Origin: Octopus bimaculoides
Taxonomy: Eukaryota
Direction of reading: 5' to 3'
Assembly: GCF_001194135.2 (NCBI RefSeq)
Contig: NC_069008.1
Location: forward strand, 15,722,896 to 15,767,130
DNA: 44,235 nt
Every line of letters starts with the position of its first letter. Positions within the stretch are counted from its first letter, which is position 1. Below are positions 18,641 to 29,926 of this stretch, in pieces. The translations under genes were made by a program, and so were the position numbers. The notes below the pieces were generated by a model. That model did no database searches. It had not been told where the DNA came from and worked only from the letters and a program-made list of their open reading frames with translations.

Positions 18641-19499
18641 GCTTTTGTACCAAAATTTGAAATTTATATTGTCACCCTTTGTGTTCTTTGCTCTCCACTC
18701 CCTCTTCCATGGTAATGTTTCCCAAACCTCTGCTTCTTTGAAACAGGACCCTAATAGATAAGCTTTTGTTTTTCCACAATGTTCTGGAGTTGATGTTTTT
18801 CACTTTCTTGTAACACCCACTCATTTGTCCCATCATCCTTGTAAGAGACTTATAACATTTACCCATATACCCATACTTCAAACACATGATATTCTCTTCA
18901 AATTTATCACTGGTACCTTTTAGCTGAAGGAAATATGTTAAAACTCTGCCTACTTAGTATATTTTGAATTAGTTGCGCTTATCTAATTATATCATGTGTA
19001 ATAATTACGTTGTGGTGAGGTAAATGTTAATGTTTGTATAAACAAGATTAGGCAACCTACATGTTTTAGTGTTGGTATTCCATAACATTCATGATTAAAT
19101 ATTTCTTTTCATCAATGCCTACTTCGTTAATTAACTGTTCCCTATTTTGCAGGACGGGGGGGGGGGGAATGGTTTTTAAGCAACAACAAATCAATCAATA
19201 GATTTCTTGACCTCCCTACTCCCTTTCCACTTCACTTCNNNNNNNNNNTTTTAAGCAACAACAAATCAATCAATAGATTTCTTGACCTCCCTACTCCCTT
19301 TCCACTTCACTTCCAGATCATAATCAATTTTTGGATTACCATCACAATGCACATTCTCTCCTTTTCTGCAAGCTATAGTGAACAATACTGATTTGTTTGG
19401 AGTCTATGGATGGATGTATATGAACAAACTAACACACACACACACACATGTGCACTTTCTTTGTTCAATATCTGTTTTACACTGAGCCCTCCACAAACA

Positions 19500-19735
19500 C
19501 ACAAACCCTTAATGTAGTCCTTAGTGAGATTCAGCACGACAAGGCCAAGCCTTTGAATTACAGACCTCACTCATTTTTGCCAGCCGAGTGAAACAGAGCA
19601 TCATCTTCAGCATTTAATGTCTGTTTTCAAATAAAATTTCTTGGTGAAGGACACAATGCAGTGCCAGGGATTGAACTCCTAACCTCACAGCCATGAAGCG
19701 AACACCCTACCCATTAAGCCAAATGCCTTCACACA
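19500..19735 (-). mobile_element. SINE upstream of ZF4 (its 3' part is also present in the ZF5 copy)
   Basis: Head GTGTGAAGGCATTTGGCTTAATGG..GGAGTTCAATCCC; 3' part similar to the 13575 SINE body. Confidence 0.7.
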
Positions 19736-19991
19736 GATAGATGTCTATGCACAAACTAATACACACATGCACTTTCTTTGCTCANNNNNNNNNNTCTACA
19801 ACAATGTGTGTGCCCCTTAGAGCAGGCCCAGTCAGCAAGAAGCATTCTTGTGCTGTATAGAAAATATATCTTCCTTGCATATTTTCCAGTCATGTAACCA
19901 GAGATCAGTGATATCTTGGACAAGAAACTGGACCATAATAGATTAACTCACAGGCATTTCTCAGCTTTTAAGCAGTTCTTGAAGAATTAAT

Positions 19992-21751
19992 ATGGAGAAT
20001 GTTGATCACTTGGACACGTCTAACGCAACTGTTGTTAACAATGTAGATACAGTTAGAGAGACAGACGGAGGTGAGAAAGTTGCAGAGAAAAATGTTGCTG
20101 AATATTTCTGTGAGATTTGTAGGAAGACATTCCCTTCAGAAGAGGAGGTCATCACACACAGAGAAATACACAAGAAGGAAAAACAGTTCCATTGTGAAAT
20201 ATGTGGGAAATATTTTGTCAATATCAGTGATTTTACAACACACAAAATATTACACACTAGAGATAAACTGTTCCATTGTGAGATATGTGGCAAATCTNNN
20301 NNNNNNNTAACGCAACTGTTGTTAACAATGTAGATACAGTTAGAGAGACAGACGGAGATGAGAAAGTTGTAGAGAAAAATGTTGCTGAATATTTCTGTGA
20401 GATTTGTAGGAAGACATTCCCTTCAGAAGAGGAGGTCATCACACACAGAGAAATACACAAGAAGGAAAAACAGTTCCATTGTGAAATATGTGGGAAATAT
20501 TTTGTCAATATCAGTGATTTTACAACACACAAAATATTACACACTAGAGATAAACTGTTCCATTGTGAGATATGTGGCAAATCTTTCTCTCTTAAATCAT
20601 TTCTTCTTATCCACATAAATAGTCACACTGGGGGAAAGCCTTTCCATTGTGATATATGTGACAAAACTTTCAGCCAGAAAGCTCGTCTTTTGACCCACCT
20701 ACGAAGTCACACAGGAGAAAAGCCATTCCACTGTGAAACATGTGGTAAATCCTTTGCTGATAACAGTGTCTTGAAAACTCACAAAAGAATCCACACTGGA
20801 GAGAAACCCTATAACTGTGAAGTGTGTGGAAAATCGTTTATTATTTATAGTTACTTAACCAGGCACAAGCGGATACACACTGGTGAGAAATCATTCCACT
20901 GTGAAATTTGTGGGAAATATTTTGTCTATAATAGTGATTTAACCAAACACAAAAGAATCCACACGGGGGAGAAACCATTTGGCTGTGAAGTGTGTGGGAA
21001 GTCTTTTGTTTGTAGCAGTGATTTAACAATGCACAAGAGAATACACACTGGAGAAAAACCATACCATTGTGGAATATGTGAGAAATCTTTCACCCAGAAA
21101 GTTCATCTTGCTACCCACATACGAAATCATACTGGGGAGAAACCCTTCACTTGTGAAATATGCGGAAAATCTTTCTTTGCTCACTCTAGTCTTGTTGTCC
21201 ACAAACGAATACATGATGAAGAGAAGCCATTCCACTGTGAAATATGCGGAAAATCTTTCACTAGTAATTATCAGCTTGTGGTTCACAAACGTAGTCACAC
21301 GGGAGAGAAACCTTACCATTGTGATACATGCGGCAAATCATTTTCTGTGAATTCTAGTCTTGTTAGCCACCAACGTAACCACACTGGAGAGAAGCCGTAT
21401 CGTTGTGAAATTTGCGGAAAATCATATTCTATTAATAAAAGTCTTGTTACCCACCTACGTAGTCACACTGGGGAAAAACCCTATCACTGTGAAATCTGTG
21501 GTAAATCATTTTCTGTTAATTATAGCCTTGTTATCCACCAACGCTGTCACACTGGAGAAAAAGCGTTCCACTGTGAAATATGTGGGAAGTCTTTCATTAA
21601 TAATTCTAGTCTTGTCGTTCACATCCGTACTCACACGGGAGAAAAACCCTATCGTTGTGAAACATGTGGCATATCGTTTAGCACTAACAGTCAATTAAAG
21701 AAGCACAAACGAATCCACACCAGAGCGAAGACTTCAGACTGTGAAACATGA
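19992..21751 (+). CDS. C2H2 zinc-finger protein ZF4 (16 fingers); assembly shows a 277-bp overlap duplication around the 10-N gap
   Basis: ATG at 19992; 20021-20297 is repeated at 20308-20584 across N10; merging gives one ORF ending KTSDCET*. Confidence 0.9.
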
Positions 21752-21889
21752 GAAATTATTCCCTTATAAATCTAAACTTTTAGTCTACCAACAATTACAC
21801 ATTGGAGAAAAACGTTTTATTTGAAAGAAATCCAATCACTGAAATCGTTTGTTAATAATTTTTATCTTGTTGTTCACATCTGTACTCAC
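21752..21889 (+). pseudogene. Relic fingers downstream of ZF4
   Basis: Shifted frames read EKLFPYKSKLLVYQQLHIGEKRF and KSFVNNFYLVVHICTH. Confidence 0.75.
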
Positions 21890-27715: not shown

Positions 27716-28207
27716 GTCACAAACAGTTCTTCAGCTGGCCAGCACCTGTTGAATTTCCAACCCATACCAGCATGGAAAACAGATGTTAAATAATGATAAT
27801 ATAGCTAACATTTGTGTAACAGCATATAGAGTATAAGTTAGTGTCAACATTTAACCTTTTCCTAACAATTATTCCTGTTGAAACACACTTCTATCAATTT
27901 TGAAGACAACACACTTCTATCAATTTTGAAGACAACAAAGAATTTGATGAAATAACTCTGTCATTCTTCAGATGGTGTTTGGAACGTATATTAATATAAA
28001 ATTTTGGAAGGATGGTTTCACTTTAAATCTTAGAACCAACTGCAGTTTTGTCAGTGAACAGGTCACGGTTTCAAAGCAATGAAAATATTTTGATGCAAAT
28101 TAAAATGTTGAAGTGAATCTAATGGATTTTTGTGTGTTCTTAAATAGATTTATAAATATCTTTCACATTGCAATTGTAAAAGTTTAGATTTGTTAGAGAA
28201 AGATTTC

Positions 28208-28849
28208 TCATGTTTCACAGTGTGAGGTCTTCCCTATAATGTGAGTTTGTTTGTGTTTCGTTAATTGGCCTTTTGACACAAATGATTTTACACATGTTTC
28301 ACAACAATAAGGTTTTTCTCCAGTGTGAGTACGGATATGAACAATAAGATGACAATTATTAACAAATGATTTCCCGCATATTTCACAATCGAAGTTTTTT
28401 TCTCCAAAGTGTATTCTCTTGTGCCTTATTAACTGTCTGCCACTACAAAAGGATTTCCCACATACTTGACACAGAAATGTTTTCTCTACTCTGTGTATTT
28501 TTTTGTGTTTTGTCAAGTCTCCATTATGAACAAAATATCTTCCACATATTTCACAATGCAAAGACTTTTCACTAAGGTGTACTTTTTTGTGATTTGAGAA
28601 GAAACTGTTATCAGAAAAGGATTTACCACATATTTCACAGTGATAAGGTTTTTCTCCAGTGTGACTTCGTAGGTGGGTAACAAGTTGAGCTTTCTGGGTG
28701 AAAGTTTTGTCACATATATCACAATTGAAGTGTTTCTCAGAGGTGTGACTATTTATATGGATAAGAAGAAATGATTTAAGAGAGAAAGATTTGCCACATA
28801 TCTCACAATGGAACAGTTTATCTCTAGTGTGTAATATTTTGTGTGTTGT
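28208..28849 (-). CDS. C2H2 zinc-finger protein ZF5 (partial; 5' end in gap 28850-29637), inverted paralog of ZF4, about 9 fingers
   Basis: Manual translation is open from the gap edge ([29 protein letters not shown]...) to KTSHCET*; the ORF track starts at an internal TTG. Confidence 0.88.
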   Translation of the reverse strand, partial: TTHKILHTRDKLFHCEICGKSFSLKSFLLIHINSHTSEKHFNCDICDKTFTQKAQLVTHLRSHTGEKPYHCEICGKSFSDNSFFSNHKKVHLSEKSLHCEICGRYFVHNGDLTKHKKIHRVEKTFLCQVCGKSFCSGRQLIRHKRIHFGEKNFDCEICGKSFVNNCHLIVHIRTHTGEKPYCCETCVKSFVSKGQLTKHKQTHIIGKTSHCET

Positions 28850-29637
28850 NNNNNNNNNNNNNNNNNNNNNNNNNNNNNNNNNNNNNNNNNNNNNNNNNNN
28901 NNNNNNNNNNNNNNNNNNNNNNNNNNNNNNNNNNNNNNNNNNNNNNNNNNNNNNNNNNNNNNNNNNNNNNNNNNNNNNNNNNNNNNNNNNNNNNNNNNNN
29001 NNNNNNNNNNNNNNNNNNNNNNNNNNNNNNNNNNNNNNNNNNNNNNNNNNNNNNNNNNNNNNNNNNNNNNNNNNNNNNNNNNNNNNNNNNNNNNNNNNNN
29101 NNNNNNNNNNNNNNNNNNNNNNNNNNNNNNNNNNNNNNNNNNNNNNNNNNNNNNNNNNNNNNNNNNNNNNNNNNNNNNNNNNNNNNNNNNNNNNNNNNNN
29201 NNNNNNNNNNNNNNNNNNNNNNNNNNNNNNNNNNNNNNNNNNNNNNNNNNNNNNNNNNNNNNNNNNNNNNNNNNNNNNNNNNNNNNNNNNNNNNNNNNNN
29301 NNNNNNNNNNNNNNNNNNNNNNNNNNNNNNNNNNNNNNNNNNNNNNNNNNNNNNNNNNNNNNNNNNNNNNNNNNNNNNNNNNNNNNNNNNNNNNNNNNNN
29401 NNNNNNNNNNNNNNNNNNNNNNNNNNNNNNNNNNNNNNNNNNNNNNNNNNNNNNNNNNNNNNNNNNNNNNNNNNNNNNNNNNNNNNNNNNNNNNNNNNNN
29501 NNNNNNNNNNNNNNNNNNNNNNNNNNNNNNNNNNNNNNNNNNNNNNNNNNNNNNNNNNNNNNNNNNNNNNNNNNNNNNNNNNNNNNNNNNNNNNNNNNNN
29601 NNNNNNNNNNNNNNNNNNNNNNNNNNNNNNNNNNNNN

Positions 29638-29926
29638 CAAAGGCTTGGCCTTGTCGTGCTGAATCTCACTAAGGACTACATTAAGGGTTTGTGTGTTTGT
29701 GGAGGGCTCAGTGTAAAACAGATATTGAACAAAGAAAGTGCACATGTGTGTGTGTGTGTGTGTTAGTTTGTTCATATACATTTATCCATAGACTCTAAAT
29801 AAATCAGGATTCTTCACTATAGCTTGCAGAAAAGGAGAGAATGTGCATTGTGATGGTAATCCAAAAATTGATTATGATCCGGAAGTGAAGTGGAAAGGGA
29901 TGATTTGTGGTTGCTTAAAAACCATT
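29638..29926 (-). repeat. Inverted copy of the ZF4 upstream region (about 19168-19555)
   Basis: About 97% over roughly 255 bp, ending abruptly at ACCATT|GGTC (29926/29927). Confidence 0.92.

What the first reader, a model, noticed from the sequence alone, without database searches (positions are those of the whole stretch)
19168..29926. ZF4/ZF5 palindrome of about 10.8 kb with mosaic identity: flanks homogenised, central fingers rewritten
Seen: the 5' flank is about 97% identical (19302-19555 vs 29638-29893). The visible end of finger 2 plus finger 3 differ by about one base. A distal 298-bp 3' block differs at about 6 sites. Yet from finger 4 onward the fingers are diverged (16 vs about 9 fingers, different helices), and the sequence between stop and distal block barely aligns. 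Inference: patchy arm-to-arm gene conversion, or very fast finger turnover, keeps regulatory flanks the same while DNA-binding specificity diverges. That would give co-regulated factors with different targets.
Basis: partly seen in the sequence, partly recalled or inferred. Interest (0 to 1): 0.7.

Follow-up and report, generated by a model that had tools for sequence, protein, structure and literature searches.

The report
Inverted octopus zinc-finger gene pair, patchily homogenised
Two tail-to-tail copies of a zinc-finger gene in a draft octopus genome are almost identical at their front ends and in one small downstream patch but old and diverged elsewhere, which looks like ordinary copy-to-copy sequence exchange within a gene cluster, seen through a gappy assembly.

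Summary
The window is Octopus bimaculoides chromosome CM046628.1 (short-read draft, GCA_001194135.2), inside a C2H2 zinc-finger cluster. ZF4 (+, 16 fingers) and ZF5 (-, 7 whole fingers visible) are convergent paralogues with a 4.6-kb spacer.

- **5' flank:** 96.6% identical.
- **End of finger 2 plus finger 3:** 0 of 92 bases differ.
- **Distal 321-bp block:** 96.3% identical.
- **Fingers from finger 4 on:** 73-89% identical.

Both 10-N gaps in or beside ZF4's coding region sit between duplicated contig ends. Collapsing them gives an intact 490-aa ORF. The 788-N gap hides ZF5's start and about 65% of the "identical" 5' tract.

Synonymous divergence is clearly uneven (dS 0.05, 0.37, about 0.75). 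The diverged fingers are old, collinear homologues under purifying selection (dN/dS 0.29), differing by whole-finger indels and contact-residue changes. They are not fast-rewritten.

The best reading is ectopic gene conversion, or partial re-copying, of about 1.1 kb at the 5' end. The distal patch may be a second tract or a repeat element. In-silico homogenisation by the assembler is not excluded. Co-regulation is untested. This pattern is known from vertebrate poly-ZF clusters, so interest is modest.

The parts
19168..22787 (+). Arm A of the inverted repeat: ZF4 with its 5' flank and 3' region. 3,620 nt as written, about 3,258 nt after removing duplicated contig ends.
   Evidence: Inverted matches to 29926-27405. 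Outer edge sharp at 19168, inner edge sharp at 22787.
19992..21751 (+). ZF4 coding sequence: 490 aa and 16 C2H2 fingers once 20298-20584 is removed. No KRAB, SCAN or BTB domain.
19239..19313 (.). Assembly artefact: a 10-N gap plus a second copy of 19174-19238 (65 nt, 100%).
20298..20584 (.). Assembly artefact: a 10-N gap plus a second copy of 20021-20297 (277 nt, 2 mismatches). The two versions may be haplotypes, or the ZF4 and ZF5 versions.
19168..19555 (+). 5' high-identity block, arm A. It pairs with 29926-29638: 8 mismatches and 2 indels in the outer part, and the last 124 nt identical.
29638..29926 (-). 5' high-identity block, arm B. It lies on a 455-nt island contig between two gaps.
   Evidence: The outer 166 nt of the island equal 30866-31031, which anchors it to the neighbouring contig.
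20522..20613 (+). End of finger 2 plus the finger 3 helix: 92 nt identical to 28849-28758. This is the inner visible end of the near-identical 5' tract.
20614..20645 (+). Inner boundary of the 5' tract. Identity falls abruptly (11 mismatches in 32 nt), and homology then continues at 89% and 76%.
28208..28849 (-). Visible part of the ZF5 coding sequence: 213 codons, 7 whole fingers, stop at 28210-28208. Four of six linkers are non-canonical.
28850..29637 (.). 788-N gap hiding ZF5's start codon, finger 1, most of finger 2 and the proximal upstream region.
   Evidence: Collinearity with 19556-20521.
22467..22787 (+). Distal 3' block, arm A: 321 nt, 96.3% identical to 27725-27405. The central 189 nt are identical and all 12 mismatches lie near the edges.
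27405..27725 (-). Distal 3' block, arm B.
22788..27404 (.). Spacer of 4,617 nt. It holds repeat-element copies and no recognisable gene. It includes a MITE-like element at 24388-24972.
21797..21892 (+). Relic finger just after the ZF4 stop (THWRKTFYLKEIQSLKSFVNNFYLVVHICTH). It aligns a little better to ZF5 than to ZF4 (72/91 vs 67/86 identities), at ZF5 finger 8.
17115..17366 (+). Possible older outer extension of arm A, 81% identical to 31344-31104. These are the only two copies in the window.
31104..31344 (-). Possible older outer extension of arm B.
11307..13025 (+). ZF3, a 19-finger paralogue of the same subfamily, used here as an outgroup. It shares the N-terminus and proximal upstream region with ZF4 at about 80-87%.

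Best explanation
ZF4 and ZF5 are two convergently oriented paralogues in an Octopus bimaculoides C2H2 zinc-finger cluster. They descend from an old inverted duplication. Since then they diverged in the usual poly-ZF way. Whole 84-nt finger units were gained or lost (16 vs about 9 fingers). Substitutions concentrated at DNA-contact positions, under overall purifying selection. Flanks decayed by insertion and deletion.

Later, one or more ectopic (non-allelic, intrachromosomal) recombination-repair events copied about 1.1 kb from one arm onto the other. The copied stretch runs from about 825 nt upstream of the start codon, through the N-terminus, to finger 3. The inner end of the tract falls at 20614-20629, in the end of finger 3 and its linker, and homology continues beyond it at lower identity. 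The perfectly identical cores inside slightly older, roughly 95% shoulders suggest repeated or nested events.

The distal 321-nt block is either a second such tract or a shared repeat element.

Shown here: the structure, the identity steps and the uneven dS. Inferred: the conversion mechanism, its direction, and the state of the 65% of the tract hidden in ZF5's gap. Any regulatory consequence is speculation.
For: - **Organism and context:** the window is 100% identical to GCA_001194135.2 CM046628.1. The cephalopod C2H2 expansion is documented (PMC9068888, PMC12513265).
- **Real inverted arrangement:** 20308-28849 is one gap-free contig that holds both 3' halves and both distal blocks.
- **Step-like identity:** 0/216 mismatches in the visible cores, 8/163 in the outer 5' flank and 39/196 from the finger 3 linker to finger 5 (Fisher p = 3e-14 and 1e-3).
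- **Uneven dS:** 0.05, 0.37, 0.78 and 0.74 along the gene, with pooled dN/dS of 0.29.
- **Collinear finger homology with unit indels**.
- **Contact residues:** positions -1, 2, 3 and 6 differ in 13/24 cases against 29/114 for other non-linker positions (p = 0.008).
- **The 5' block is a paralogue copy, not a repeat-element hit:** it starts in sequence shared with ZF3's upstream region and includes ZF4-specific extra sequence.
- **Mismatches in the distal block are clustered at its edges** (permutation p = 2e-4), as expected if the core was re-homogenised.
- **Assembly fragmentation fits a true near-identical repeat:** arm A is broken into four contigs exactly across 19168-20614, and arm B has its gap there.
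- **Precedent:** short conversion tracts and finger gain and loss among poly-ZF paralogues are already described (PMC2604467).
Against: - Only 381 of about 1,074 nt of the proposed 5' tract are visible in arm B.
- Both perfectly identical 5' stretches end at contig ends, so the short-read assembler or gap closer could have mixed reads from the two copies.
- The outer edge of the 5' tract (19168/29926) and both edges of the distal block are flanked by unrelated sequence. That is not the classic picture of a conversion tract embedded in continuing homology.
- No orthologous locus, long-read assembly or other family member could be retrieved, so there is no phylogenetic test.
Confidence: 0.6

Rival explanations
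1. In-silico homogenisation or mis-assembly. The two arms are real paralogues, but the 100%-identical stretches, and possibly the placement of the 455-nt island contig, are products of a short-read assembler and gap closer mixing reads from two similar copies or two haplotypes.
For: - The region is full of assembly defects. There are duplicated contig ends at two 10-N gaps.
- A 166-nt segment is present twice at 100% (29927-30092 = 30866-31031).
- There are ten N-runs in 44 kb.
- The identical 5' stretches in arm B both end exactly at gap edges.
Against: - Each identical stretch is contiguous with arm-specific sequence on the same contig: 28757 downward on one side, and 29762-29926 with its 8 differences plus 29927-30092 on the other.
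- The island contig is anchored by 166 identical nt to the next contig, in the orientation expected for ZF5's flank.
- The distal block lies inside a gap-free 8.5-kb contig.
- The roughly 95% shoulders cannot be made by read mixing.
Confidence: 0.15
2. The distal 321-nt block is not an exchange tract. It is two copies of one young interspersed repeat, or a fragment of one, that lie downstream of each gene.
For: - Both edges are sharp, with unalignable sequence on either side.
- The intervening 3' UTRs (684 vs 451 nt) do not align.
- ZF3 has no counterpart.
- The neighbourhood is dense in repeat copies, one of which ends 21 nt from the block in arm B.
- Conversion should be inefficient where flanking homology is absent.
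Against: - There is no third copy in the 44-kb window, although other repeats there have 2-4 copies.
- No terminal inverted repeats or target-site duplications were seen by eye at the edges.
- There is no Rfam or tRNA-like signal.
- Both copies have the same orientation relative to their genes and form the inner ends of the arms.
- Mismatches are clustered at the edges, with 189 identical central nt (p = 2e-4). Independent decay of two insertions does not predict that.
Confidence: 0.3
3. The whole palindrome is young, as young as its flanks, and the fingers diverged very fast under positive selection while the flanks stayed the same.
For: Contact residues are enriched among the amino-acid differences. 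Finger numbers differ.
Against: - Synonymous divergence in the diverged fingers is 0.37-0.78, against 0.05 in finger 3.
- dN/dS is 0.29, not above 1.
- The non-coding 3' UTR beyond 31 nt is unalignable.
- The possible outer arm segment is only 81% identical.
Confidence: 0.05
4. Selection for co-regulation. The identity of the flank and N-terminus is maintained because the pair must share regulation, and conversion is merely the vehicle.
For: A second convergent ZNF pair in the same window (ZF1/ZF2) also shows end-biased similarity.
Against: - No expression or promoter data are available.
- Zero synonymous and non-coding differences reflect recency, not selection.
- In ZF1/ZF2 it is the last three fingers, not the 5' end, that are most alike.
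- Most of the shared flank is lineage-specific extra sequence.
Confidence: 0.07

Closest known systems
Lineage-specific poly-zinc-finger (C2H2) paralogue clusters of vertebrates, as analysed by Emerson & Thomas 2009 (PMC2604467)
   Same: Clustered, recently duplicated poly-ZF genes. Paralogues almost always differ in finger number. Substitutions are concentrated at DNA-contact positions. Short gene-conversion tracts are detected between paralogues.
   Different: Here the genes lack KRAB, SCAN or BTB effector domains. The organism is a cephalopod. The pair is convergent and inverted, and the tract covers the 5' flank plus the first three fingers.
Cephalopod C2H2 expansion (Albertin et al. 2022, PMC9068888; iScience 2025, PMC12513265)
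   Same: Same genome and gene superfamily: hundreds to thousands of clustered C2H2 genes in O. bimaculoides.
   Different: In the passages searched, PMC9068888 proposes gene conversion only for protocadherins and PMC12513265 does not use the term. Neither was found to describe inverted ZNF pairs or mosaic identity.
Large palindromes with arm-to-arm gene conversion (for example human Y-chromosome ampliconic palindromes; recalled from general knowledge, not tested here)
   Same: Inverted arms separated by a unique spacer, with intrachromosomal exchange between arms as the homogenising mechanism.
   Different: Those arms are near-identical over their whole length and tens to thousands of kb long. 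Here only about 1.4 kb in patches is homogenised, and the rest is 73-89% identical or unalignable.

Membership tests
C2H2 poly-zinc-finger gene | Tandem C-X2-C-X12-H-X3-H units of 28 aa joined by TGEKP-like linkers | tested here: met
   ZF4 has 16 units and ZF5 has 7 visible units. Pfam zf-C2H2 E = 2e-80 and 1.4e-37. Four of ZF5's six linkers are non-canonical.
KRAB/SCAN/BTB-type ZNF (vertebrate KZFP-like) | N-terminal effector domain | tested here: not met
   No such Pfam hit. The ZF4 N-terminus before finger 1 is only 37 aa. ZF5's N-terminus is hidden in the gap.
Non-allelic gene-conversion tract | A segment with significantly higher identity than the adjoining homologous sequence | tested here: met
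   0/216 vs 39/196 mismatches, p = 3e-14. dS 0.05 vs 0.37-0.78.
Non-allelic gene-conversion tract | Homology continues beyond the tract boundaries at the background level | tested here: inconclusive
   Met at the inner boundary of the 5' tract (20614 onward, 89% then 76%). Not met at its outer boundary (19168/29926) or at either edge of the distal block.
Non-allelic gene-conversion tract | Tree incongruence between tract and non-tract regions, using orthologues or further paralogues | not testable with these tools
   No orthologue or close relative was retrievable. ZF3 cannot be compared with ZF5 in the tract because ZF5's part is mostly gap.
Interspersed repeat / transposable element (for the two high-identity blocks) | Further copies elsewhere, terminal repeats or target-site duplications | tested here: not met
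   No third copy in the window. No TIR or TSD seen by eye at the distal block's edges. No tRNA or Rfam signal. The 5' block starts in gene-family upstream sequence. Genome-wide copy number could not be tested.
Arm-to-arm homogenised palindrome (Y-chromosome type) | Arms near-identical along their whole length | tested here: not met
   Only 19168-20613 (partly visible) and 22467-22787 are at least 96% identical. The rest is 73-89% or unalignable.
Assembly artefact | Duplicated sequence flanking N-runs, with identical blocks confined to contig ends | tested here: inconclusive
   Met for the two 10-N gaps and for 29927-30092 = 30866-31031. The palindrome itself and the distal blocks lie in one gap-free contig, and the blocks include arm-specific differences.

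The most novel reading that the evidence does not exclude
Convergent inverted ZNF pairs, of which this 44-kb window holds two, might be a recurrent architecture of the octopus C2H2 expansion. In that reading, repeated arm-to-arm conversion keeps the promoter-proximal sequence and the N-terminal module of a pair identical while the finger arrays diverge. The result would be systematically co-regulated factors with different DNA targets.
Probability: 0.07. Interest if true: 0.55.

Novelty: new member of a known kind. Interest (0 to 1): 0.22.

Why it matters
If confirmed with long reads, this would be a concrete, locus-level example that ectopic gene conversion acts inside the octopus C2H2 expansion. 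In the cephalopod genome papers searched here, conversion was proposed only for protocadherins. Conversion of this kind would distort paralogue trees and dating of that expansion. It also warns that the short-read O. bimaculoides assembly breaks, duplicates and loses sequence exactly where young paralogous tracts lie. Gene models (ZF4, ZF5) and copy counts in these clusters are therefore unreliable. It does not reveal a new kind of mechanism.

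Tried and rejected
- **Protein searches for orthologues or other assemblies.** I searched with full ZF4, its N-terminal 116 aa, and the visible part of ZF5. Only generic ZNF hits at 57% identity or less came back, or nothing close.
- **Exact-protein look-ups.** ZF3 and ZF1 are not on record. Only the 530-aa ZNF at 37526-39118 was found, and it identified the genome.
- **SINE test.** An Rfam scan of 16500-32000 at E up to 1 and ARAGORN on the whole window found nothing. 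I ran these to test a tRNA-derived SINE in the 5' flank.
- **3' UTR alignment.** Sensitive word-7 alignment of the two 3' UTRs, and of both against ZF3's 3' flank, found nothing beyond 31 nt past the stop.
- **Spacer ORFs.** No meaningful Pfam hit.
- **Independent repeat insertion for the 5' block.** Rejected, because the block starts in sequence shared with ZF3's upstream region and continues into coding sequence.
- **ZF4 and ZF5 as alleles.** Rejected, because both 3' halves lie inverted on one contig.
- **Small upstream exon in ZF3.** It has acceptor-like and GTGAGT donor-like signals, but they are not conserved in ZF4, so I dropped the idea.

Full report
**Source and context.** The window is a draft eukaryotic scaffold with 37% G+C and ten N-runs. 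An exact-protein look-up of the 530-aa ZNF at 37526-39118 returned Octopus bimaculoides GCA_001194135.2, chromosome CM046628.1. The fetched locus is 100% identical to the window over 7,593 nt, so record coordinate = window coordinate + 15,722,895. The window holds at least six C2H2 zinc-finger ORFs, a Tc1/mariner-type transposase relic and many repeat copies. The large C2H2 expansion of coleoid cephalopods is documented (PMC9068888, PMC12513265).

**Gaps first.**
- The 10-N gaps at 19239-19248 and 20298-20307 each sit between two copies of the same sequence. The first pair is 19174-19238 = 19249-19313 (65 nt, 100%). The second is 20021-20297 vs 20308-20584 (277 nt, 2 mismatches). These are overlapping contig ends that the scaffolder did not merge.
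- Collapsing the second pair gives a continuous, in-frame ZF4: ATG at 19992, stop at 21749-21751, 490 aa, 16 fingers. The two versions differ by G27D and A31V. They may be haplotypes, or the ZF4 and ZF5 versions. That cannot be decided here.
- The gap at 19785-19794 is non-coding and has no overlapping flanks.
- The 788-N gap at 28850-29637 hides ZF5's start codon, finger 1 and most of finger 2. The corresponding interval of arm A is at least 669 nt, so the arms are roughly collinear there.
- The interval 20308-28849 has no gap. The inverted arrangement of both 3' halves and both distal blocks is therefore contig-level sequence, not a scaffolding decision.

**Anatomy.**
- Arm A (19168-22787, +) carries ZF4. 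Arm B (29926-27405, -) carries ZF5. The spacer (22788-27404) holds only repeat copies and no recognisable gene.
- ZF5 is readable from 28849 to its stop at 28210-28208. That is 213 codons: the end of one finger and seven whole fingers.
- Finger-by-finger nucleotide comparison shows collinear homology. ZF5 fingers 3, 4, 5, 6, 7, 8, 9 match ZF4 fingers 3, 4, 5, 7, 8, 15, 16 at 88, 89, 76, 77, 75, 82 and 73%. The difference in number is therefore due to indels of whole 84-nt units (ZF4 finger 6 and fingers 9-14).
- Both genes end in KTS(D/H)CET*, and homology runs 31 nt past the stop. A relic finger follows the ZF4 stop at 21797-21892.
- Neither protein has KRAB, SCAN or BTB.

**Identity profile.**

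| Segment | Coordinates (arm A) | Result |
|---|---|---|
| 5' flank, outer part | 19168-19431 | 8 mismatches in 163 compared nt, plus a 26-nt indel and a 2-nt CA-repeat indel |
| 5' flank, inner part | 19432-19555 | 0 mismatches in 124 nt, up to the gap |
| End of finger 2 + finger 3 | 20522-20613 | 0 mismatches in 92 nt |
| Tract boundary | 20614-20645 | 11 mismatches |
| Finger 4 | 20642-20725 | 89% |
| Finger 5 | 20726-20809 | 76% |
| Distal block | 22467-22787 vs 27725-27405 | 12 mismatches in 321 nt, all within 93 nt of the left edge or 39 nt of the right edge; central 189 nt identical |

- The visible cores (0/216) differ from the finger 3 linker to finger 5 region (39/196) with Fisher p = 3e-14. 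They differ from the outer 5' flank (8/163) with p = 1e-3.
- The mismatch-free run in the distal block has permutation p = 2e-4.
- Nei-Gojobori estimates give dS = 0.05 for the end of finger 2 plus finger 3, 0.37 for fingers 4-5, and 0.78 and 0.74 for the two distal finger pairs. Pooled dN/dS is 0.29.
- Synonymous divergence is therefore clearly not uniform.

**What the diverged part says.** High dS and dN/dS well below 1 mean the finger arrays diverged long ago under constraint. 'Very fast turnover' is not supported. Amino-acid differences are enriched at helix positions -1, 2, 3 and 6: 13/24 against 29/114 at other non-linker positions, odds ratio 3.5, p = 0.008. This is the familiar pattern of poly-ZF paralogues (PMC2604467). 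Four of ZF5's six visible linkers have lost the TGEKP consensus. That hints at relaxed constraint on ZF5, but the visible ORF is intact.

**Is the 5' block a repeat element?** No.
- ZF3 (11307-13025) is a paralogue with the same N-terminus.
- Its upstream region is homologous to ZF4's at 19097-19198 (= 11049-11131) and again from 19843 to the ATG (= 11180 onward).
- ZF4 has about 640 nt (19199-19842) where ZF3 has 48 nt.
- The ZF4/ZF5 block starts at 19168, inside the family-conserved piece, and continues through that ZF4-type extra sequence. It is therefore a copy of a ZF4-type gene front, not an independent insertion.
- ZF4-ZF3 homology continues upstream of 19168, where ZF5 has unrelated sequence. 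So 29926 is a breakpoint on the ZF5 side.

**Is the island contig misplaced?** The 5' block of arm B lies on a 455-nt contig (29638-30092) between two gaps. Its outer 166 nt are 100% identical to 30866-31031 on the next contig. There they are followed by about 291-nt tandem-like units instead of the ZF flank. This is more assembly redundancy, probably an insertion polymorphism or repeat resolved twice. It still anchors the island beside that contig, in the orientation expected for ZF5's flank. The island also carries 8 substitutions and 2 indels relative to arm A, so it is not simply arm A sequence.

**Mechanism.** The simplest account has three steps.
1. An old inverted duplication. The background is about 75-82% identity and possibly reaches 17115-17366 / 31344-31104 at 81%.
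2. The usual poly-ZF divergence.
3. One or more ectopic gene-conversion or partial re-copying events that overwrote about 1.07 kb at the 5' end. In arm A, after collapsing, that is 71 + 471 + 503 + 29 nt. The inner end lies at 20614-20629.

Identical cores within roughly 95% shoulders suggest nested events. The fragmentation of arm A into four contigs exactly over this interval, and the gap in arm B, are what a short-read assembler does with a two-copy near-identical repeat. That is an inference.

**Distal block and remaining weaknesses.** The distal block could be a second tract. Its sharp edges in unalignable surroundings equally suit a repeat element, and the genome-wide copy number could not be checked. 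Three weaknesses remain.
- Only 381 of about 1,074 nt of the 5' tract are visible in arm B.
- The identical 5' stretches touch contig ends.
- No orthologue, further family member or long-read assembly could be reached.

**Comparison with what is known.**
- Short conversion tracts, finger gain and loss, and contact-residue diversification among clustered poly-ZF paralogues are established in vertebrates (PMC2604467).
- In the cephalopod genome papers searched, gene conversion is proposed only for protocadherins in PMC9068888, and the term is absent from PMC12513265.
- This is not a Y-type homogenised palindrome, because most of the arms are diverged.
- The finding is therefore a new example of a known kind, in a lineage where it has not been spelled out.
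- The regulatory reading, that shared flanks give co-regulated factors with different targets, has no evidence for or against it here.

**Verdict.** Interest is low to moderate, and long reads are needed.

Noticed in passing
window 57-1945 (+) and 8354-6271 (-): ZF1 (544-1536, +) and ZF2 (6431-7510, -) form a second convergent inverted ZNF pair with a spacer of about 4.3 kb. Finger 1 is 88% identical and the last three fingers are 90, 95 and 90%, while the middle fingers are about 80-86%. The flanks match at 80-84%. The mosaic is milder, and here it is the 3' end that is most alike.
   Followed up: partly
window 29927-30092 and 30866-31031; 30436-30582 and 30727-30873: A 166-nt segment occurs twice at 100% identity either side of the 343-N gap. 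A roughly 291-nt unit also repeats at 96.6%. This is probably haplotype or repeat redundancy in the scaffold upstream of ZF5.
   Followed up: partly
window 24388-24972 and 4840-5465: A MITE-like element of about 585 nt with 48-nt terminal inverted repeats sits in the ZF4/ZF5 spacer. An 88-93% identical copy lies in the ZF1/ZF2 spacer.
   Followed up: partly
window 14741-15511 (-): Relic of a Tc1/mariner-type transposase (Pfam DDE_3 and HTH_23), interrupted by a 10-N gap.
   Followed up: partly
window 19409-19467 and 19736-19784: There is a direct repeat inside ZF4's 5' flank, about 88% identical with a different CA-repeat length. The second copy ends exactly at the 10-N gap 19785-19794, so this may be another unmerged or mis-joined contig end.
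   Followed up: no
window 11090-11197: Upstream of ZF3 there is an acceptor-like TTTTTACAG, a short ATG-started ORF and a GGTGAGT donor-like site, which could be a small 5' exon. These signals are not conserved in ZF4 or ZF5.
   Followed up: partly
window 28208-28849 (-): ZF5 linkers read TSEKH, LSEKS, RVEKT and FGEKN instead of TGEKP in four of six cases. ZF4 keeps the consensus in most. This may indicate relaxed constraint on ZF5's DNA binding.
   Followed up: no
window 37090-37473 and 37526-39118 (-): Two adjacent ZNF ORFs lie on the same strand, 52 nt apart. The 530-aa one is an annotated protein in the public record. The 127-aa one may be a detached finger block or a separate remnant.
   Followed up: no
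window 19155-19167: A run of 13 G lies directly at the outer breakpoint of arm A, between sequence shared with ZF3's upstream region and the start of ZF4/ZF5 homology.
   Followed up: no
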